Shown: positions 5,429 to 18,120, counted from the stretch's first letter. The stretch: DNA of 64,000 nt from Pecten maximus (GCF_902652985.1 NC_047026.1:30690001-30754000); one strand, 5' to 3'. Numbers and translations: made by a program. Notes: generated from the letters alone by a model not told the origin.

Positions 5429-7861
5429 TAATTCTAAAACCTACATAATTAGTCTTATTGTTTTTCTTGATACACTGAGACAGTTTTGTCGTTTTGACAA
5501 AGGAATAATTATATTTACACAGTTTATTTATACGTTTAGGTAGACCAACGTAATATTTTCGAAAAGTGACAAGCAAAATATATACATGTACATGCTTTTA
5601 AATAAATTGTCCAAGAAATGCGAGATGAAATTTGTGAACATTTTATTTCTATACATGATATATTTATATTACTGCATATACTTTCTCTGCATAATATGTA
5701 ATACTGCATATAATGCTGCATAACAACTATACTTTGCTTTTGGAATATTAAAAAATGTGTCCAATAAGGCAATCAACGATTCCAAAATAATGCATATAAG
5801 ACTGTATCATACATGTGTTTTGTCTTTTTACGACTCGTCATTGTTGCTATAGGGCCTCCAGAAAATCCAGAAGGGAGATTTGAAGCATCAAAATTTGCCT
5901 GATAAAAACTATCTACTACGTACGTATACAGCTGTATGTGTGAATAGTCTGAGCACATGCCACCGTTCATTATTAAAAAAACAACACAGAAAACACTTTC
6001 CAAATGCCGGAGCAAAACAGAAAATATTACATACTTCTACGGTTGTTAAATTTTGTCTGCTAGTTTACAATCTAGAAATGTTTAAATAAGGTAATTAAAT
6101 ATTTATCATCCACCAGTAATATTGTTGACCAGCTGATTGATACTTATGACTTTTCTCTTGTTCTTATATTTTCTATTTTGCAATGACGGAAATTAAGAGA
6201 CCTATTTATGATACGATAGTTGTTATGTATCTCATATGATAATATATATCTATTATATTTACAAAATACTGTGTATTGTTCAGGGAGAGAGTTAGTGTAA
6301 ACTACGCCTGTTGCCCAATTCGCTTTGTTCTGCGCAATGAAATATTCTGAAATGTCAAATCTAAGGTGACTTAATTTAAGTACACCAAAAATAATCAAGG
6401 GTTTTTGTTGTGCTGTTTATACATGTTTGGTTAATGAAGATGATCTGTAATTGGTACAAATATCGTTGGAAGTATGTTTGACATCAAGATATGAACAAGT
6501 ATGAGGGTTAATAAGTTTTGAAATAGTTATTGGCTAACATTGAACTATTCAGCACTGAAAAACCAGATGTTTCAACCAGGCATGTACCTTATTCATCAGT
6601 ATTTATATTTGTATATAATATCGAGTGAACAATTTCCTTACGGCAAAGGTATCTATTATCACTCTTCGTGGAAGGTAATTTTGCTATTAAAACATCTGGC
6701 TTACCCATGCATGTAAATAAATGCAAGAATACTTACCGGTGATCCATTTGTTATAAGTTAATTAGAAGAATAAACGAACACAAAATCCAATATATTGAAA
6801 CGTTCCAAAGACCATTTTATGTGTCGTACTTGAACGAATCATTTTTGACAATGCAGTCATATCTAGGAACGTTTTTTAAGGTAAATAATAACATTTTGTG
6901 TACGAATATTTTTGATATCTTGCATTCAAATCAAATTGCATCTGCAATTGTTTTATGGTGTAATTTTTCAAAACCAATATTATATATAGCATAATTATAT
7001 ACCTACCTGAATGAGCTTTGCCAATTCTCCGTTCACTTCCATTAATTTATTTTGAAATTCAGCTTACTCTGTTTTAGTTTCAATTTAGATACTAACTTTT
7101 GTGAAATTTTCAATGTTTTTCCCCCTTAATTTCAATAACCATTGCTTCCAAAATTGCTGAATTAATATTCTCGGTAATGATATTAAAAAACAGATGTTTC
7201 TAAGAAGATACATGATAATTATTACTGAAACATAGAACGATAACATACAATCACATTCCTTCTAAATTTATAATCATCTTGTAGCTCTATACGTGTGTGT
7301 TGAGCACAAGCTAATTGTATGAAAAGGAAGATAACAACTTGTTTACGGTATTTATACACAATGCTATCAGCGCCATCTGTGAGACTTAAATAGTAACAAA
7401 GTCCAGAAGGGTAGATATCATACGGTCAGATTTGAATATTGTATTACTTCCCGAAAGACAGAGATTTATTGCTCAGGTAACTCAACAGCTGTCTATCGAT
7501 TGTATTGCTATGGAAATTTATTGACCACAGACATCATGTCAATTGATAACACATATAGCTTCATGTAAAAACATATGTCTATCACACACAAACTGTCATA
7601 TGTACTCACAGCAAACATATGTCTATCACAAACAAACTCTCATATGTACTCACAGCAAACGTATGTCTATCACACACAAACTCTCATATGCAATTACAAC
7701 AAAACTATTTTAATCACACAGACGTCACACGTATGAAGACAACTACCATCAATCTGTCTTGTGAACAAACTTACAGTAAAGTAATACCATACACATTCAC
7801 CACACAAATGTATAGACCAACTAATCTCTCTTTCGGACATATATGCAGCTTACGACAACAC

Positions 7862-10800
7862 ACATCTATACATCTATATGACACACAGTCAATTACTATA
7901 TATATATATCAATCTATATCACACACAGTCAATTACTACATATCTATCTATATCACACACAGTCAATTACTACATATCTGTCTATATCACACACAGTCAA
8001 TTACTACATATCTATATATATCACACACAGTCAGTTACTACATATCTGTCTATATCACACACAGTCAGTTACTACATATCTATATATCTATATCACACAC
8101 AGTCAATTACTACATATCTGTCTATATCACACACAGTCAATTACAACATATCTATCAATATCACACACATTCAGTTACTGCATATCTATCTATATCACAC
8201 ACAGTCAATTACTACATATCTATCTATATCACACACAGTCAATTACTATATCTATATCTATATCACACACAATCAGTTACTATATATATATCTATATCAC
8301 ACACAGTCAATTACTACATATATATCTATATCACACACAGTCAATTACTACATATCTACCTATATCACACACATTCAGTTACTATATATATATCTATATC
8401 ACACACAATCAATTACTATATATATATATCTATATCACACACAGTCAATTACTACATATATATCTATATCACACACAGTCAATTACTACATATATATCTA
8501 TATCACACACAGTCAATTACTACATATCTATCTATATCACACACAGTCAATTACTACATATCTATCTATATCACACACATTCAATTACTACATATATATA
8601 TATCTATATCACACACAGTCAGTTATTTCATATCTATCTATATCGCACACATTCAATTACTACATATCTATCTATATCAGTCAATTACTACATATCTATC
8701 TATATCAGTCAGTTACTACATACATCTATCTATATCACACACAATCAATAACTACATATCTATCTATATCACACACAGTCAATTACTACATATCTATCTA
8801 TATCACACTCAGTCAATTACTACATATCTATCTATATCACACACAGTCAATTACTTCATATCTATCTATATCACACACAGTCAATTACTACATATCTATC
8901 TATATCACACACAGTCAATTACTACATATCTATCTATATCACACACAGTCAGTTACTACATACATCTATCTTGATCACACACAGTCAATTACTACATATC
9001 TATCTATATCACACACAGTCAGTTACTACATATCTATCTATATCACACACAGTCAATTACTACATATCTATCTATATCACACACAGTCAATTACTACATA
9101 TCTATCTATATCACACACAGTCAATTACTACATATCTACCTATATCACACACAGTCAATTACTACATATATATATATCTATATCACACACATCCTATTAC
9201 TACATATCTATCTATATCACACACAGTCAATTACTTCATATATATCTATAACACACACAGTCAGTTACTAAATATCTATCTATCTATATCACACATAGTC
9301 AATTACTACATATCTACTGTATCTATATCACACACAGTCAGTTACTACATATATATCTATCTATATCACACATAGTCAATTACTACATATCTACATGTAT
9401 CTATATCACACACAGTCAGTTACTACATATCTATCTATATCACACACATTCAATTAGTACATACATCTATCTATATCACACATAGTCAATTAATACATAT
9501 CTACATGTATCTATAATCACATATCTATATACATCACACACACAGTCAATTACTACATATCTATCTATATCACACACAGCCAATTACTACATACCTATCT
9601 ATATCACACACAGTCAATTACTACATATCTATCTATATCACACACAGTCAATTACTACATATATATATCTATCTATATCACACAGGGTCAATTACTACAT
9701 ATCTATATATATCACACACAGTGAGTTACTACATATCTATATATATCACACACATCCTATTACTACATATCTACTGTATCTATATCACACACAGTCAGTT
9801 ACTACATATATATCTATCTATATCACACATAGTCAATTACTACATATCTACATGTATCTATATCACACACAGTCAGTTACTACATATCTATCTATATCAC
9901 ACACATTCAATTAGTACATACATCTATCTATATCACACATAGTCAATTAATACATATCTACATGTATCTATAATCACATATCTATATACATCACACACAC
10001 AGTCAATTACTACATATCTATCTATATCACACACATTCAGTTACTGCATATCTATCTATATCACACACAGTCAATTACTACATATCTATCTATATCACAC
10101 ACAGTCAATTACTATATATATATCTATATCACACACAATCAGTTACTATATATATATCTATATCACACACAGTCAATTACTACATATATTCTTATATCAC
10201 ACACAGTCAATTACTACATATCTACCTATATCACAACACATTCAGTTACTATATATATATCTATATCACACACAATCAATTACTATATATATATCTATAT
10301 CACACACAGTCAATTACTACATATATATCTATATCACACACAGTCAATTACTACATATATATCTATATCACACACATTCAATTACCTACATATCTATCTA
10401 TATCACACACAGTCAATTACTACATATCTATCTATATCACACACATTCAATTACTACATATATATCTATATCACACACAGTCAGTTATTTCATATCTATC
10501 TATATCGCACACATTCAATTACTACATATCTATCTATATCAGTCAATTACTACATATCTATCTATATCAGTCAGTTACTACATACATCTATCTATATCAC
10601 ACACAATCAATAACTACATATCTATCTATATCACACACAGTCAATTACTACATATCTATCTATATCACACTCAGTCAATTACTACATATCTATCTATATC
10701 ACACACAGTCAATTACCTACATATCTATCTATATCACACACAGTCAATTACTACATATCTATCTATATCACACACAGTCAATTACTACATATCTATCTAT

Positions 10801-11706
10801 ATCACACACAGTCAGTTACTACATACATCTATCTTGATCACACACAGTCAATTACTACATATCTATCTATATCACACACAGTCAATTACTACATATCTAT
10901 CTATATCACACACAGTCAATTACTACATATCTACCTATATCACACACAGTCAATTACTACATATATATATCTATATCACACACATCCTATTACTACATAT
11001 CTATCTATATCACACACAGTCAATTACTTCATATATATCTATAACACACACAGTCAGTTACTAAATATCTATCTATCTATATCACACATAGTCAATTACT
11101 ACATATCTACTGTATCTATATCACACACAGTCAGTTACTACATATATATCTATCTATATCACACATAGTCAATTACTACATATCTACATGTATCTATATC
11201 ACACACAGTCAGTTACTACATATCTATCTATATCACACACATTCAATTAGTACATACATCTATCTATATCACACATAGTCAATTAATACATATCTACATG
11301 TATCTATAATCACATATCTATATACATCACACACACAGTCAATTACTACATATCTATCTATATCACACACAGCCAATTACTACATACCTATCTATATCAC
11401 ACACAGTCAATTACTACATATCTATCTATATCACACACAGTCAGTTACTACATATCTACCTATATCACACACAGTCAATTACTACATATCTATCTATATC
11501 ACACACAGTCAATTACTACATATCTATCTATATCACACACAGTCAATTACTAGATATCTATTTATATCACACACAGTCAGTTACTACATATCTATATATA
11601 TCACACACAACCAATTACTACATATCTATCTATATCACACACAACCAATTATTACATATATATATATATCTATATCACACACAGTCAATTACTACATATA
11701 TATATA
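7862..11706 (+). repeat. 34-bp satellite (TATCACACACAGTCAATTACTACATATCTATCTA)n, left block
   Basis: Tandem array read directly; the long ORFs here repeat every 34 aa (3 x 34 bp). Related degenerate ~45-bp units precede it at 7565-7700. Confidence 0.97.
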
Positions 11707-11707
11707 G

Positions 11708-11875
11708 AGGTTCCCCAACGAGTGGAGGTTGTTTATCATTTTTATCCAACTCGAGTTAGTTAATTTTCTAATTTTGAAAAGACACGAGCTTTAACGAGTG
11801 TCTTTTCAAAATTAGAAAATTAACTAACGAGAGTTGGATAAAAATGATAAACAACCTTCACGTGTTGGGGAACTT
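11708..11875. repeat. Left terminal hairpin (~168 nt)
   Basis: gttccccaac...gaaaagacac / gagctttaacga / gtgtcttttc...gttggggaac: self-complementary apart from a few mismatches. Confidence 0.95.
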
Positions 11876-12182
11876 GTTTATCCCATAACTCTTATTCTTC
11901 AACTGTGCCGAGTTCAAATTCTCCCAACGTAGCCATTGATACGCTGTTAGCCGCATCACTCCTTGAAGAATATAGTTCCTAAATAGAGAACTCTTAATAT
12001 GTCGTTTAGAATAACGCTCGTGATAACTGTGGTATATTAGTTGCTGTTAAGGAAATTGGAATATGAAATTATACAAGAAAATAAACATTTTGAATGAATT
12101 TTATTAATACAGCACTTGCTATAAATCACTCCGCGTTACAAAGATGACACCGCGCTCCAGGTCGAAACTACCAGCTACAAGC

Positions 12183-13997
12183 TTAATCACTGTCCGATTC
12201 GATAATGGGACGTTTCCTGGACGTTGCAGCAATGTAATTATTGTTAACTGTGATGTTAAAAGTCCCCCCGAAGATCTGTCCATTCAGTACACCACAAGGA
12301 AGACGCGTATCTGCAGGCTTTCCGGAGATAGAGATGGAATGCTGGCCTACTGTCATGGCACTGGTCATGGTGGAGCTGGTGACACGTGTAGTTTCGGTAT
12401 TCATTGCTGATGGGATCACAGGACAGCTAGCACTGCTGCCATAATCAGAGGACAACATATTCGAAATTGTCCGTTGTTGTTGAGAGTTCAACGTCGAATA
12501 TGCGTTAATGCTTTGCACATTTTTGTGTCCGGAGATCTACAGTGGGAAAAAAATCGTGCATTAGGAAATCTGTCAGTTGATCCGAGATCTCTTTTTGAAT
12601 TTAGGCCTTCCAAAAAAACTAGTGATAAAAAATAATATGGAATTGTATATTTTGTGTTTGGGATATAAATTCATAATAAAGGTAAGTGGACTGGTTTAGA
12701 AGATGGTGTTTGTTACATGTGTTTTACATTTTTAATGCCTGCATGATTTGTGTAGGCGCTATACCACTGTAGTTCAACTTCTGGACAAGGTACTTCCTGG
12801 CCGAATGGTTGGTCAACCTTTTCCCAGTTTCCCCTTTTACTTTGAGGCCTATGAGAAAAGCGCATAAACTGGGTAACCATTGTGCATATTTAATAATACA
12901 TTGACAATTTTAAAAATAAATATACGACAAACCGCGTGATATGAACGAAGGGAGACAACTCGTATTTATTTTTAAGTAATCACACCTGCTTTCACTGCCA
13001 TCGAAGGCATGAATTTCGACAACTTGTTCACTTCCATAGGCTGGTTTTTAAACCATTTCTCCGATTTCTCGGTGTTTGTGTTTGTCGCAATGTAAAATGG
13101 CGTTTCTGGTCCACTACAGGCTGCCGGCCGATGGTTACTGTACATTTTATAATACTTTACAGGACATTTGTCAGGGTTTGTGGGTGTCGCCCATGCCCAA
13201 GGGGGGATCGCCCGAACATTCCTTGTGTTTGAACCGGGACGAGTTTTCGTCTGACGTTCATTGTATTCCAGATACTCGCGGTTGTCTGTGTCAAAACACA
13301 ACTTTACGTCGCCCCATTTCATGTTGTGATGTTCAGTTACCCCGCGCATACCGAAATGAATTGTATTCAAAAACCAGACTGTCCTCAACAAGGCATCTGG
13401 TGTTTTACTACCAAGTTGATCGAATTCAAAAAGGCGATCAATCTCTTCATCAGTGATTGGATCTGCACGGTGTTCTAAATTTCCTTTGCCAGAACGTTTC
13501 AATTTCTTCTGTTTTGGTTTTGATAACTTCTTGAAGTTTAGAAAAAATGCTATCATTCACGATACTGTAACCATAACTTTTTTGGCGAAGATATCTATCT
13601 ATACTGGCAGCGATGCCACGAACAGTGCTCGGTTCATAATCATCGCCGTCTTTTTTCTTCATATTAACAAAGAAAATGCACAGCAATTTGCACAAATCAT
13701 TTGGAGGAATATGTTCAATTTGGCGACATTCCTTCAGTTGTGTTTTCAGGAAATCCGACAGATTTCTCATATCATTTTCCGTTTTCCGTGCAGTGTTTTT
13801 GTTTTGTTCTTCTTCGATAAATTTATCTACATCCAAATTGTACAGTTCCATATCAGAACCGTCATCGTTAGATAGCTCTTTAGACTCTGTGACTAAATTT
13901 GTTTTCTGTTTTGCTTGAGCGACAGCGGACGTACCAGGGACAGGGGGGTCGGATTTGGGTACATCAATCCGATATCTTGCCTCCGTACATGTTTTAC
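12183..13997 (-). pseudogene. Tyrosine recombinase, left copy: 5'-truncated and frameshifted
   Basis: Exons 13997-12986, 12848-12739, 12536-12183. One extra base near 13512 splits ORFs 13450-13851 and 12972-13556. Intron 2 donor is GC. The first ~43 codons are missing, with an in-frame stop just inside the spacer. Confidence 0.85.
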
Positions 13998-14058
13998 GCT
14001 TGTTTCACAACTGATATGGCACGTGTTAAAGATCGTAGCAGTGTGTTATTGTTTTTGT

Positions 14059-14214
14059 TTACACACCGCGGTGTGTAACCACTTTCAGAGCGTCCGATTG
14101 GCTAACTCTGACCTGCAACAGTTCTGATTGGCTAACCTCTGACGTTTGACACCGGACTACTTTTAACCCAGCGCGTGTTGTTTTGTTGTCGTCTGTCAAT
14201 CAAAAAACGTCAAC
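14059..14214 (+). promoter_or_regulatory. Putative recombinase promoter in the central spacer
   Basis: Perfect 20-bp palindrome TTACACACCGCGGTGTGTAA (14059-14078); two direct repeats GATTGGCTAAC(C)TCTGAC, each an inverted CCAAT box (~14096, ~14126); Kozak-like caacATGg at 14215. Confidence 0.55.
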
Positions 14215-16157
14215 ATGGCCACGTTTTTAGACTTGCCGGTAATCAACATTGGCGATACAGTGACTGTCATGGGTAAGAAGGGTGTCGTACGGGAAAAGTC
14301 GAATAATCTGGGGTTTGAATCCTTTGATATTCAATTTGATGACGGTAAAACATGTACGGAGGCAGATATCGGATTGATGTACCCAAATCTGACCCCCCTG
14401 TCCCTGGTACGTCCGCTGTCGCTCAACCAAAACAGAAAACAAATTTAGTCACAGAGTCTAAAGAGCTATCTAACGATAACGGTTTTGATATGGAACTGTA
14501 CAATTTGGATGTAGATAAATTTATCGAAGAAGAACAAAACAAAAACACTGCACGGAAAACGGAAAATGATATGAGAAATCTGTCGGATTTCCTGAAAACA
14601 CAACTGAAGGAATGTCGCCAAATTGAACATATTCCTCCAAATGATTTGTGCAAATTGCTGTGCATTTTCTTTGTTAATATGAAGAAAAAAGACGGCGATG
14701 ATTATGAACCGAGCACTGTTCGTGGCATCGCTGCCAGTATAGATAGATATCTTCGCCAAAAAAGTTATGGTTACAGTATCGTGAATGATAGCATTTTTTC
14801 TAAACTTCAAGAAGTTATCAAAACCAAACAGAAGAAATTGAAACGTTCTGGCAAAGGAAATTTAGAACACCGTGCAGATCCAATCACTGATGAAGAGATT
14901 GATCGCCGTTTTGAATTCGATCAACTTGGTAGTAAAACACCAGATGCCTTGTTGAGGACAGTCTGGTTTTTGAATACAATTCATTTCGGTATGCGCGGGG
15001 TAACTGAACATCACAACATGAAATGGGGCGACGTGAAGTTGTGTTTGGACACAGACAACCGAGAGTATCTGGAATACAATGAACGTCAGACGAAAACTCG
15101 TCCCGGTTCAAACACAAGGAATGTTCGGGCGATCCCCCCTTGGGCATGGGCGACACCCACAAACCCTGACAAATGTCCTGTAAAGTATTATAAAATGTAC
15201 AGTAACCATCGGCCGGCAGCCTGTAGTGGACCAGAAACGCCATTTTACATTGCGACAAACACAAACACCGAGAAATCGGAGAAATGGTTTAAAAACCAGC
15301 CTATGGGAGTGAACAAGTTGTCGAAATTCATGCCTTCGATGGCAGTGAAAGCAGGTATGATTACTTAAAAATAAATACGAGTTGTCTCCCTTCGTTCATA
15401 TCACGCGGTTTGTCGTATATTTATTTTTAAAATTGTCAATGTATTATTAAATATGCACAATGGTTACCCAGTTTATGCGCTTTTCTCATAGGCCTCAAAG
15501 TAAAAGGGGAAACTGGGAAAAGGTTGACCAACCATTCGGCCAGGAAGTACCTTGTCCAGAAGTTGAACGACAGTGGTATAGCGCCTACACAAATCATGCA
15601 GGTATTAAAAATGTAAAACACATGTAACAAACACCATCTTCTAAACCAGTCCACTTACCTTTATTATGAATTTATATCCCAAACACAAAATATACAATTC
15701 CATATTATTTTTTATCACTAGTTTTTTTGGAAGGCCTAAATTCAAAAAGAGATCTCGGATCAACTGACAAATTTCCTAATGCACGATTTTTTTCCCACTG
15801 TAGATCTCCGGACACAAAAATGTGCAAAGCATTAACGCATATTCGACGTTGAACTCTCAACAACAACGGACAATTTCGAATATGTTGTCCTCTGATTATG
15901 GCAGCAGTGCTAGCTGTCCTGTGATCCCATCAGCAATGAATACCGAAACTACACGTGTCACCAGCTCCACCATGACCAGTGCCATGACAGTAGGCCAGCA
16001 TTCCACCTCTATCTCCGGAAAGCCTGCAGATACGCGTCTTCCTTGTGGTGTACTGAATGGACAGATCTTCGGGGGGACTTTTAACATCACAGTTAACAAT
16101 AATTACATTGCTGCAAAGTCCAGGAAACGTCCCATTATCGAATCGGACAGTGATTAA
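14215..16157 (+). CDS. Crypton-type tyrosine recombinase (DUF3504, related to ZMYM/KCTD1/QRICH1 domain), 3 exons, 534 aa if one frameshift is corrected
   Basis: Exons 14215-15354, 15492-15601, 15804-16157 with GT-AG introns. Catalytic motifs HFGMRG (R), QTKT (K), TNHSAR (HxxR), SGHKNVQSINAY (H, Y). A 1-bp deletion at ~14364 relative to the left arm separates ORFs 14215 and 14352. Confidence 0.88.
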
Positions 16158-16465
16158 GCTTGTAGCTGGTAGCTTCGACCTGGAGCGCGGTGTCATCTTT
16201 GTAACGCGGAGTGATTTATAGCAAGTGCTGTATTAATGAAATTCATTTAAAATGTTTATTTTCTTGTATAATTTCATATTCCAATTTCCTTAACAGCAAC
16301 TAATATACCACAGTTATCACGAGCGTTATTCTAAACGACATATTAAGAGTTCTCTATTTAGGAACTATATTCTGTCAAGGAGTGATGCGGCTAACAGCGT
16401 ATCAATGGCTACGTTGGGAGAATTTGAACTCGGCACAGTTGAAGAATAAGAGTTATGGGATAAAC

Positions 16466-16633
16466 AAGTTCCCCAACACGTAAAGGTTGTTTATCATTTT
16501 TATCCAACTCTCGTTAGTTAATTTTCTAATTTTGAAAAGACACTCGCTAAAGCTCGTGTCTTTTCAAAATTAGAAAATTTACTAATTCGAGTTGGATAAA
16601 AATGATAAACAACCTCCACTCGTTGGGGAACCT
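16466..16633. repeat. Right terminal hairpin (~168 nt)
   Basis: Reverse complement of the left hairpin; apex gacac-tcgctaaagctc-gtgtc. Confidence 0.95.
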
Positions 16634-16634
16634 C

Positions 16635-18120
16635 TATATATCACACACAGTCAATTACTACATACCTATCTATATCACACACAGTCAGTTACTACATATA
16701 TATCTATATCACACACAGTCAATTACTACATATCTATCTATATCACACACAGTCAATTACTACATATCTATCTATATCACACACAGTCAATTACTACATA
16801 CCTATCTATATCACACACAGTCAATTACTACATATCTATCTATATCACACACAGTCAATTACTACATATCTATCTATATCACACACAGTCAATTACTACA
16901 TATCTATCTATATCACACACAGTCAATTACTACATATCTATCTATATCACACACAGTCAGTTCCTACATATCTATCTATATCACACACAGTCAATAACTA
17001 CATATCTATCTATATCACACACAGTCAATTACTACATATCTATCTATATCACACACAGTCAATTACTACATACCTATCTATATCACACACAGTCAATTAC
17101 TACATATCTATCTATATCACACACAGTCAATTACTACATATCTATCTATACTACACACAGTCAGTTACTACATATCTATCTATATCACACACAGTCAGTT
17201 ACTACATACATCTATCTATATAACACACAGTCAATTACTACATATCTATCTATATCACACACAGTCAGTTACTACATACATCTATCTATATCACACACAG
17301 TCAATTACTACATATCTATCTATATCACACACAGTCAGTTACTACATACATCTATCTATATCACACACAATCAATAACTACATATCTATCTATATCACAC
17401 ACAGTCAATAACTACATATCTATCTATATCACACACAGTCAATTACTACATATCTATCTATATCACACACAGTCAATTACTACATATATATCTATATCAC
17501 ACACAGTCAATTACTACATATCTATCTATATCACACACAGTCAATTACTACATATATATCTATATCACACACAATCAATTACTACATATCTATCTATATC
17601 ACACACAATCAATTACTACATATCTATCTATCTATCTATATCACACACAGCCAATTACTACATGTATCTATATCACACACAGTCAATTACTACATATCTA
17701 TCTATATGACACACAATCAATTACTACATATCTATCTATATCACACACAGTCAATTACTACATATCTATCTATCTACCTGGTATATCACACACAGTCAGT
17801 TACTTCATATAATTATCTATATCACACACAATCAATTACTACATATCTATCTATCTATATCACACACATTCAATTACTACACATATCTATCTCTATCACA
17901 CACAGTCAATTACTACATATCTATCTATCTATCTATATCACACACAGTCAGTTACTACATATCTATTTATATCAGACACAATCAATTACTACACATATCT
18001 ATCTATATCACACAGTCAATTACTACATATATATTGCATTTGTCTATATCATACACAGTCAATTATTACACATATATTGTTTCTATCTATATCATACACA
18101 GTCAGTAACTGTACATATTT
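16635..18120 (+). repeat. 34-bp satellite, right block
   Basis: Same unit and orientation as 7862-11706; degenerates after ~17700. Confidence 0.97.

What the first reader, a model, noticed from the sequence alone, without database searches (positions are those of the whole stretch)
11707..16634. Giant palindromic tyrosine-recombinase element whose inverted repeats are the gene itself
Seen: a 4928-bp element with two ~99% identical 2.29-kb inverted arms. Each arm holds most of a 3-exon recombinase gene, the 3' region and a terminal hairpin, around a unique 347-bp spacer with the promoter and first ~43 codons. It is flanked by TATATA, and the host satellite keeps its orientation on both sides, which argues against a fold-back read artefact. 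Known: Cryptons encode a tyrosine recombinase and are classically described with short direct repeats, not multi-kb inverted repeats. Inference: either (a) a mobile unit replicating through a hairpin-ended or fold-back intermediate, captured as a head-to-head dimer, as for protelomerase-processed or rolling-hairpin replicons; (b) a terminal repeat extended across the gene by template switching; or (c) two one-ended elements joined head to head. I do not know of a described family with this architecture.
Basis: partly seen in the sequence, partly recalled or inferred. Interest (0 to 1): 0.9.

Follow-up and report, generated by a model that had tools for sequence, protein, structure and literature searches.

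The report
Head-to-head pair of Crypton transposon copies
The 4.9-kb palindrome is present in the assembly, but it is a one-off inverted duplication of an ordinary 2.65-kb tyrosine-recombinase (Crypton) jumping gene whose single-copy form occurs hundreds of times in this scallop-like genome, so it is not a new kind of mobile element.

Summary
Window 11706-16635 has two 2.29-kb inverted arms, 99% identical, around a 347-bp spacer. Each arm ends in a ~170-nt hairpin. The host 34-bp satellite keeps its orientation and phase on both sides.

- The spacer is not unique. It is the conserved 5' end of a family with at least 264 canonical 5' termini in this genome.
- Most sampled copies are ~1.5-kb non-autonomous monomers: 5' region, short body, 3' hairpin, flanked AT...AT.
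- The only other full gene-bearing copy (contig C17) is a monomer with that 5' end.
- The arm/spacer junction occurs nowhere else in the assembly. It lies 13-15 nt inside the right copy and ~360 nt inside the left copy, with 2-3 nt of microhomology.

The gene is a three-exon CryptonA-type tyrosine recombinase (DUF3504; R, HxxR, H and Y all present). All three copies in the assembly are broken.

Best reading: two sister monomers lie head to head at one AT site, with DNA missing at the centre. Either inverse re-integration followed by a central deletion, or replicative template switching, would give this.

Earlier notes of this scan already described hairpin-ended Cryptons on other DNA of this genome. 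A second sister-arm palindrome in another Crypton family (contig C15) keeps a mechanistic link open.

The parts
11706..13997 (-). Left arm: an inverted copy of the element lacking its 5' ~360 nt (no 5' terminus, promoter or first 43 codons). It is a pseudogene, with a +1 frameshift near 13513 and a GT>GC change at the intron-2 donor near 12739.
11706..11876 (.). Left terminal hairpin, the mirror image of the 3' hairpin. Its outer foot AGAGGTTCCCC abuts the flank ...ATATAT.
   Evidence: (I4)
11877..11889 (.). TTTATCCCATAAC at the inner foot of the hairpin, identical to the family's 5' terminal 13 nt.
13995..13998 (.). Head-to-head junction (13997|13998). The left copy is broken at the position equivalent to 14345. 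The right copy is broken 13-15 nt inside its 5' terminus. The overlap is (T)AC. The junction is unique in the assembly.
13998..14344 (+). 347-bp spacer: the 5' region of the right copy. It holds conserved cis sequence, the promoter region, the ATG at 14215 and the first 43 codons. It is the 5' end shared by the whole family.
14059..14078 (.). Perfect 20-nt palindrome TTACACACCGCGGTGTGTAA, invariant in 24 family copies.
14096..14136 (+). Two GATTGGCTAAC (inverted CCAAT-box-like) motifs, at 14096-14106 and 14126-14136. The second is >90% conserved in 24 family copies; the first is conserved through GATTGGCT only. Calling them promoter elements is inference.
14215..15354 (+). Exon 1 of the recombinase: a small N-terminal domain, a QRICH1-like domain and DUF3504 (first catalytic R at 14994). 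A derived 1-bp deletion at 14363 breaks the frame at codon 50.
15492..15601 (+). Exon 2, which carries the HxxR motif (NHSARK; H at 15533, R at 15542). Intron 1 is 15355-15491, GT..AG.
15804..16157 (+). Exon 3, which carries GHK and the catalytic Tyr (TAT at 15840) and ends at the stop codon. Intron 2 is 15602-15803, GT..AG.
14345..16635 (+). Right arm, the part of the right copy that is duplicated in inverted orientation on the left.
16452..16464 (.). GTTATGGGATAAA, the reverse complement of the family's 5' terminus, at the inner foot of the 3' hairpin.
16465..16635 (.). 3' terminal hairpin ending ...GTTGGGGAACCTCT, the canonical 3' terminus of the family.
7800..18100 (+). Host 34-bp satellite array interrupted by the element. 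It has the same orientation on both sides. The flanks are ...ATATAT|element|ATAT.... The rebuilt empty site is one 34-nt unit plus a duplicated AT.

Best explanation
The mobile unit is a ~2.65-kb monomeric animal Crypton, roughly the spacer plus one arm. It consists of:
- a 5' terminus TTATCCCATAACYAC...;
- about 170 nt of conserved cis sequence with the promoter;
- a three-exon tyrosine-recombinase gene;
- a ~170-nt terminal hairpin ending ...GGGGAACCTCT.

Copies are inserted at AT, with AT on both sides. By analogy with other Cryptons this implies an excised circle whose hairpin-AT-5'-terminus junction recombines with a target AT (inferred).

The window holds two sister copies of this unit head to head at a single AT site in a satellite. 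The hairpin ends face outward and about 375 nt are missing at the centre: ~360 nt from the left copy and 13-15 nt from the right copy.

Two routes fit, and the sequence alone cannot separate them. I weight them about equally.
1. Inverse re-integration plus deletion. A second copy recombined in the opposite orientation at the first copy's 5' junction, which is possible because the AT crossover dinucleotide is its own reverse complement. Alternatively an inverted dimer circle integrated. The resulting perfect palindrome centre was then removed by an asymmetric stabilising deletion with (T)AC microhomology.
2. Template switching. A replication error with two template switches inside one resident copy: one in the self-complementary (TA)n flank, one at the TAC microhomology.

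Either way the composite has lost both 5' termini, so it cannot form the family's normal junction. It is a non-mobile, decaying one-off. It is neither the architecture of a family nor a replicative form (inferred).
For: Monomer is the family form:
- The C17 copy is spacer plus one arm with a canonical 5' end and no second arm.
- About 25 sampled loci are ~1.5-kb non-autonomous monomers with the same 5' region and 3' hairpin.
- There are 264 canonical 5' termini genome-wide.

Ends and target:
- The termini and the AT..AT flanks were read from the sampled copies.
- Seven head-to-tail junctions read CCTCT-AT-TTATCCC.
- At such a junction the hairpin gains a 13-bp foot formed with the 5' terminus.

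The palindrome is unique:
- The arm/spacer junction is found only here; every other match starts at the family's 5' region.
- No close head-to-head or tail-to-tail junctions exist in the family.
- The right copy lacks the terminal TTATCCCATAACT.

The arms are real and are sister copies:
- They differ by 22 substitutions with a transition bias. Derived changes sit on both arms, 16 on the left and 9 on the right, polarised with C17.
- The arms are 99.0% identical to each other but 97.6-97.9% identical to C17.

Single insertion site: the flanks rebuild one satellite unit plus AT.

Gene identity: DUF3504 at 4e-27. The three exons are collinear with an intronless 536-aa paralogue, and R, HxxR, H and Y are present. 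Homologues occur in bivalves, cnidarians and a hemichordate, many also carrying PF00589. All gene copies are broken.

Literature: Crypton properties and non-autonomous derivatives are described in PMC3212892. Palindrome formation at short inverted repeats, and the centre-break literature (Cunningham et al. 2003, seen only as a reference-list title, not read), are cited in PMC2444050 and PMC4255720.
Against: - No read-level or second-assembly confirmation could be obtained.
- Which of the two formation routes applies is not resolved. No intermediate, such as a perfect head-to-head pair, exists in this family.
- A second sister-arm palindrome in a different Crypton family on contig C15 is centred on that family's natural 5' stem-loop. 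This hints that inverted dimers may be more than accidents.
- The circle intermediate and the AT crossover are inferred, not shown.
Confidence: 0.8

Rival explanations
1. The palindrome is a captured by-product of the transposition chemistry itself. A fold-back (hairpin-primed or nick-run-off) copy of an excised or nicked element was made as an inverted dimer and then fixed in the chromosome. On this view inverted dimers recur in hairpin-ended Cryptons.
For: - The arms are each other's closest relatives.
- Both outer ends are exact element/flank junctions at one insertion site.
- A second sister-arm palindrome exists in a different Crypton family at C15:37.89 Mb. Its arms are 99.3% identical, and its centre is exactly that family's 5' stem-loop with a single loop. 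It carries an extra inverted 37-nt 5' terminus, and the host minisatellite is continuous on both sides.
- The same hairpin/inverted-terminus junction recurs as a 120-nt remnant on C16.
Against: - In the window the inner junction is at a non-specific position, 13-15 nt and ~360 nt inside the two copies, with only 2-3 nt of overlap. It is not at a hairpin or terminus.
- It is 1 palindrome against 264 monomer termini and 7 tandem junctions in this family.
- The monomer has a hairpin at one end only.
- The C5 inverted pair proved to be two unrelated subfamily copies, 85% identical.
Confidence: 0.1
2. Assembly artefact: a single monomer, or two haplotypes of it, wrongly assembled as an inverted repeat inside a satellite array.
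For: - The locus sits in a 10-kb satellite that is hard to assemble.
- Arm divergence of 1.0% is within the range expected between haplotypes of a heterozygous bivalve (own knowledge).
- No reads could be inspected.
Against: - There are no N gaps in the window.
- The flanks keep orientation and phase. A fold-back chimeric read or an inverted haplotig would invert a flank.
- The palindrome is interrupted by a 347-bp asymmetric spacer, not a perfect fold-back.
- Both arms carry their own derived, transition-biased substitutions.
- No alternative contig with a monomer allele of this locus exists.
Confidence: 0.05
3. The palindromic form is the true architecture of an autonomous element family with gene-length inverted repeats, and the monomers are its derivatives.
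For: Only the structure at this one locus.
Against: - Every other gene-bearing or non-autonomous copy is a monomer with a conserved 5' terminus that the palindrome lacks.
- The junction is unique.
- Both gene copies in the palindrome are broken.
Confidence: 0.02

Closest known systems
CryptonA elements of animals (Kojima & Jurka 2011, PMC3212892)
   Same: - A single gene encodes a tyrosine recombinase whose domain is Pfam DUF3504, with no reverse transcriptase.
- The host is an animal.
- Short direct repeats sit at the ends, here AT.
- Non-autonomous derivatives far outnumber the autonomous copies.
   Different: - That paper reports no terminal repeats of any kind for animal Cryptons. This family has a ~170-nt terminal hairpin plus a 13-nt motif shared in inverted orientation between the 5' terminus and the hairpin foot.
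- The gene has two introns.
- The window copy is rearranged into a head-to-head pair.
Large palindromes formed in cellular DNA: short inverted repeat or microhomology next to a break, and centre-break stabilising deletions (Yasuda & Yao 1991; Butler et al. 1996; Tanaka et al. 2002; Cunningham et al. 2003, as cited in PMC2444050 and PMC4255720)
   Same: - Kilobase arms of near-identical sequence.
- An asymmetric unique centre.
- 2-3 nt of microhomology at the inner junction.
   Different: Those events invert everything distal to the break. Here the duplication stops exactly at the element's ends and the host flanks are unchanged, so either two template switches or a recombinase-made inverted pair is needed.
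Site-specific recombinases acting on sites with a symmetric crossover region, e.g. lox sites with symmetric spacers and FLP inversion in the yeast 2-micron plasmid (own knowledge)
   Same: A tyrosine recombinase with a self-complementary crossover sequence (AT) can join partners in either orientation, giving inverted as well as direct arrangements.
   Different: This has not been shown for this enzyme. The 2-micron inverted repeats are a functional part of that plasmid, whereas this palindrome is a single dead locus.
Rolling-hairpin or protelomerase replicons: parvoviruses, N15, Borrelia
   Same: Head-to-head dimers with hairpin-forming termini, and in the protelomerase case a tyrosine-recombinase-like enzyme.
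   Different: - The monomer here has a hairpin at one end only.
- The dimer junction is not at a terminal hairpin.
- No Rep/HUH or protelomerase gene is present.
- No second copy of the dimer exists.

Membership tests
Crypton (CryptonA group) | Encodes a tyrosine recombinase with the catalytic R-H-R-Y residues | tested here: met
   DUF3504 at E = 4e-27. R lies in HFGMRG (14994), HxxR in NHSARK (15533/15542), H in GHK, and Y in NAY (15840). The exons are collinear with an intronless 536-aa paralogue. Many homologues also carry PF00589. All local copies carry frameshifts.
Crypton (CryptonA group) | No reverse transcriptase or other transposase, which distinguishes it from DIRS, Ngaro and VIPER | tested here: met
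   The ORF list of the whole element shows only the recombinase gene. The remaining ORFs are antisense or out-of-frame shadows. Pfam searches of the other ORFs were empty.
Crypton (CryptonA group) | Short direct repeats at the ends; no long terminal direct or inverted repeats in the mobile unit | tested here: met
   AT precedes the 5' terminus in 21 of 30 ends and follows the 3' terminus in 28 of 30. The monomers have no long TIR or LTR. The 13-nt inverted motif and the one-sided hairpin are additions to the published description.
Crypton (CryptonA group) | Multi-copy, with defined ends at many loci, including non-autonomous derivatives | tested here: met
   264 canonical 5' termini. About 25 sampled ~1.5-kb non-autonomous copies.
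Crypton (CryptonA group) | Excision as a circle and integration by site-specific recombination | not testable with these tools
   Only indirect evidence: 7 exact head-to-tail junctions CCTCT-AT-TTATCCC, and the hairpin-plus-foot structure formed at that junction.
Crypton (CryptonA group) | Phylogenetic placement inside the CryptonA clade | not tested
   No reference Crypton protein set was available. The distribution of homologues (bivalves, cnidarians, hemichordate) and the DUF3504 match are consistent with CryptonA as described in PMC3212892.
Palindromic or rolling-hairpin replicon (parvovirus-like or protelomerase-processed) | Terminal hairpins at both ends of the unit genome, and dimer junctions centred on a terminal hairpin | tested here: not met
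   The monomer has a hairpin at the 3' end only. The window junction lies 13-15 nt and ~360 nt inside the two copies, at a non-palindromic site.
Palindromic or rolling-hairpin replicon (parvovirus-like or protelomerase-processed) | Encodes a Rep/HUH nickase or a telomere resolvase | tested here: not met
   The only gene is a DUF3504 Crypton-type recombinase.
   The junction is unique in 918 Mb. The C17 copy and all sampled relatives are monomers.

The most novel reading that the evidence does not exclude
Inverted sister-copy dimers may be a recurrent by-product of how hairpin-ended animal Cryptons move. A polymerase U-turn or fold-back on a recombinase-nicked or single-stranded copy would produce them. 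On this reading the window palindrome and the C15 palindrome, which is centred on its family's 5' stem-loop, are fossil intermediates. They would point to a replicative, structure-dependent step in Crypton transposition.
Probability: 0.12. Interest if true: 0.7.

Novelty: new member of a known kind. Interest (0 to 1): 0.3.

Why it matters
As a palindrome it matters little. It is one rearranged, dead locus of a transposon family, and it shows that a striking architecture seen in a single window can dissolve once the rest of the genome is consulted.

Its main use is as a marker. The comparison needed to explain it pins down the real ends of an animal Crypton family:
- the 5' terminus TTATCCCATAAC;
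- a 3' hairpin whose foot pairs with that terminus at circle-type junctions;
- an AT crossover.

The published description of animal Cryptons reports no terminal repeats, so these ends add to it. The scan's earlier notes reached the same point on other DNA of this genome.

If inverted sister dimers prove recurrent, they would offer a way into the still untested mechanism of Crypton transposition.

Tried and rejected
- As a result the junction has no read-level or independent-assembly check.

Ideas tested and dropped:
- Perfect head-to-head and tail-to-tail junctions in the family were searched by pattern and none was found.
- An inverted pair of 5' termini on C5 looked like a mirror-image case. 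Its two parts are only 85% identical and belong to different subfamilies, so it is just adjacent insertions.
- A 17-nt intron joining the upstream ORF to the main ORF was considered. It was rejected because the two frames are separated by a derived 1-bp deletion at 14363. The left arm and the C17 copy read straight through.
- The N-terminal 49 residues show no significant BLAST match to the paralogue's N-terminus. The Tudor_5 Pfam hit is far below threshold.
- Literature searches found no description of Crypton hairpin ends or Crypton palindromes in bivalves.
Full report
**1. Observation**

The repeat finder on window 10500-18000 returns three contiguous inverted-repeat blocks. Together they make arms 11700-13977 and 14364-16641 at 99% complementarity, plus a hairpin at each outer end. 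A direct alignment of the two arms extends them to 13997 and 14345. That leaves exactly 347 unique bases, 13998-14344.

The outermost six bases of each arm are self-complementary ATATAT flank. The element proper is therefore 11706-16635, or 4,930 bp.

The surrounding 34-bp satellite spans about 7.8-18.1 kb. It has the same orientation and strand skew on both sides. The last unit on the left (32 nt) plus the first 4 nt on the right rebuild one 34-nt unit with a duplicated AT. The composite therefore occupies a single insertion site.

**2. The gene**

ORF 14352-15368 matches Pfam DUF3504 (E = 4e-27) and the QRICH1 domain. Reading the downstream sequence gives two GT..AG introns, 15355-15491 and 15602-15803.

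- Exon 2 (15492-15601) carries NHSARK.
- Exon 3 (15804-16157) carries GHK...NAY.

The three pieces are collinear with an intronless 536-aa paralogue elsewhere in the genome (L039). They align to its residues 107-392, 398-425 and 426-534, at 49%, 75% and 32% identity. The full tyrosine-recombinase tetrad is present.

The ATG is at 14215 in the spacer. In the left arm and in the C17 copy this frame reads straight into the main ORF. The right arm has lost one A at 14363, which breaks the frame at codon 50.

The left copy lacks the first 43 codons. It also has a +1 frameshift near 13513 and a GT>GC change at the intron-2 donor. The C17 copies are broken too. No intact gene of this lineage is in the assembly.

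Homologues at 40-60% identity come from bivalves (Argopecten, Mytilus, Saccostrea, Pinctada), cnidarians and a hemichordate. Most carry DUF3504 with or without PF00589. This fits the CryptonA group, whose recombinase domain is the source of DUF3504 (PMC3212892).

The assembly size (918,306,378 bases in 3,983 contigs) matches what I recall for the king scallop reference. The scan's earlier notes also name that species. I did not verify the species independently.

**3. What the rest of the genome shows**

A DNA search with the centre of the element and follow-up BLAST gave three results.

First, only two other loci carry the gene at more than 90% identity, and both are on contig C17.
- One is a complete monomer: 5' region plus one arm. 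A 2.3-kb unrelated insertion interrupts its 5' region.
- The other is an internal fragment.
- Neither has a second arm.

Second, the spacer is the 5' end of an abundant family. Most of the 25 sampled loci had the same three parts: a ~350-nt 5' region (77-82% identical to the window), a short unrelated body, and the 3'-terminal ~240 nt including the hairpin (~90% identical). Complete copies measured 1.27-1.75 kb, most of them 1.42-1.51 kb.

Third, the ends are sharp. Every copy begins TTATCCCATAAC(Y)ACGCTTGTTTCAC and ends ...GTTGGGGAACCTCT. AT lies outside the 5' end in 21 of 30 cases and outside the 3' end in 28 of 30.

Pattern searches count 264 canonical 5' termini in the genome. They also count 7 exact head-to-tail junctions CCTCT-AT-TTATCCC.

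At such a junction the hairpin gains a 13-bp foot, because the 5' terminal TTTATCCCATAAC pairs with GTTATGGGATAAA at the hairpin's inner base. The fold is -86.5 kcal/mol, z = -20.8. For the window hairpin alone the values are -66.2 kcal/mol and z = -16.4.

The first ~170 nt are more than 90% conserved across 24 copies. This stretch includes a 20-nt perfect palindrome and two GATTGGCTAAC boxes. The coding part is riddled with stops in the non-autonomous copies.

The mobile unit is thus a monomer of about 2.65 kb. Its features fit the Crypton model of circle excision and recombination at a short shared sequence. That mechanism is inferred, not shown.

**4. What the palindrome is**

The window's right copy lacks the first 13-15 nt of the family terminus (TTATCCCATAACT). 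At that point it is joined to the inverted left copy, which is broken at the position equivalent to 14345, about 360 nt inside the element. The two share only (T)AC.

A search with 141 nt across this junction finds the full length only at this locus. All 39 other scored matches begin at the family's 5' region. No perfect head-to-head or tail-to-tail junctions exist in the family.

Both outer junctions are canonical 3'-end/AT junctions.

With the C17 monomer as outgroup, the 25 arm differences split 16 derived on the left and 9 on the right. Of the 22 substitutions, 15 are transitions. The arms are 99.0% identical to each other and 97.6-97.9% identical to C17. They are real, separately decaying sister copies.

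**5. How it arose**

Two routes fit all of this.

(i) Inverse re-integration followed by deletion. The AT crossover is self-complementary. A circle could therefore recombine with the resident copy's 5' junction in the inverted sense, or an inverted dimer circle could integrate. Either gives hairpin-out, head-to-head copies at one site. Long perfect palindromes are known to be trimmed by asymmetric central deletions; I saw this literature only as citations in PMC4255720 and PMC2444050 and did not read it. Such a deletion would leave the 347-bp asymmetry and the microhomology.

(ii) Two template switches during replication of a single resident copy. One would be in the self-complementary (TA)n flank and one at TAC. 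Short inverted repeats or microhomology next to breaks are an established source of large palindromes (PMC2444050).

I cannot separate these from sequence. Both make the palindrome a secondary, single-locus event. Because the composite has no 5' terminus, it should be unable to form the hairpin-AT-5'-terminus junction, and so unable to move (inferred).

**6. Artefact?**

I think an artefact is unlikely, about 5%.
- There are no Ns.
- The flanks are not inverted.
- The centre is asymmetric.
- Each arm has its own transition-biased derived changes.

**7. A complication worth recording**

While checking protein hits for oppositely oriented neighbours, I found a second sister-arm palindrome in a different, defective Crypton family. 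It lies at C15:37,891,813-37,895,829 (L047 2813-6829).

- Its arms are 99.3% identical over 1.5 kb. Other copies of that family are about 92-98% identical to them.
- Its centre is exactly the family's natural 5' stem-loop (7-9-bp stem, 22-nt loop), present once.
- An extra inverted 37-nt 5' terminus follows the right hairpin.
- The host minisatellite is continuous across the whole structure.
- The same hairpin/inverted-terminus junction recurs as a 120-nt remnant on C16.

That structure looks more like a polymerase U-turn at a terminal hairpin than the window's does. It keeps alive, at about 10-12%, the idea that inverted dimers are by-products of the transposition mechanism.

A third candidate on C5 turned out to be two unrelated subfamily copies.

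**8. Relation to what is known, and to the scan**

Kojima & Jurka (PMC3212892) state that they found no terminal repeats in animal Cryptons, and they describe non-autonomous derivatives. A 2026 paper repeats that Cryptons lack TIRs (PMC13465315). The hairpin and the 13-nt foot motif therefore add to the published picture.

The scan had already noted hairpin-ended Cryptons, and a head-to-tail stack in a minisatellite, on other DNA of this genome. I reproduced the ends and the head-to-tail junctions independently for this family.

The palindrome itself is a rearranged member of a known kind.

**9. Verdict**

The claim of a new palindromic family is not supported.

Interest is 0.3. The value lies in the family anatomy and in the open question raised by the C15 structure, not in the palindrome.

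Noticed in passing
L047 2813-6829 (contig C15:37,891,813-37,895,829): A second sister-arm palindrome, in a different and defective Crypton family. A (-) copy with an internal 576-nt deletion is joined at its natural 5' stem-loop to a (+) copy that starts at nt 30. An extra inverted 37-nt 5' terminus follows the right hairpin. The arms are 99.3% identical. The host minisatellite is continuous on both sides.
   Followed up: partly
L068 5848-5966 (contig C16:9,566,848-9,566,966): A 120-nt remnant made of one hairpin arm plus the inverted 37-nt 5' terminus of the C15 family. It has exactly the same junction as in the C15 palindrome. Its origin is unexplained.
   Followed up: partly
L024 2744-3163; L062-L065; 7 loci genome-wide: Exact head-to-tail junctions (…GGGGAACCTCT-AT-TTATCCCATAAC…) between copies of the window's family. 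The junction folds into the hairpin plus a 13-bp foot.
   Followed up: partly
L032 5303-7628 (contig C17:28,624,302-28,626,627): A 2.3-kb insertion inside the 5' region of the C17 monomer. It is an unrelated element with ~13 tandem copies of a ~156-bp unit between unique ends (CAAGAGGCCCATGG... / ...GGTCCAGGTGAGCT).
   Followed up: no
contig C2:10,692,702-10,697,885 (L039, L040) and many other loci listed: The genome holds at least 120 scored DUF3504/Crypton recombinase matches, several with intact intronless ORFs of 480-610 aa. Two of these are identical copies 4.3 kb apart in tandem. They are candidates for currently active Cryptons.
   Followed up: no
window 14059-14078: A perfect 20-nt palindrome, TTACACACCGCGGTGTGTAA, invariant in 24 family copies. 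It lies 75 nt from the 5' terminus. Function unknown; it may be a recombinase or transcription-factor site.
   Followed up: no
window 15355-15491 and 15602-15803: The recombinase gene of this family has two spliceosomal-type introns that are absent from a 49%-identical paralogue (L039). This means intron gain or loss within a transposon gene.
   Followed up: partly
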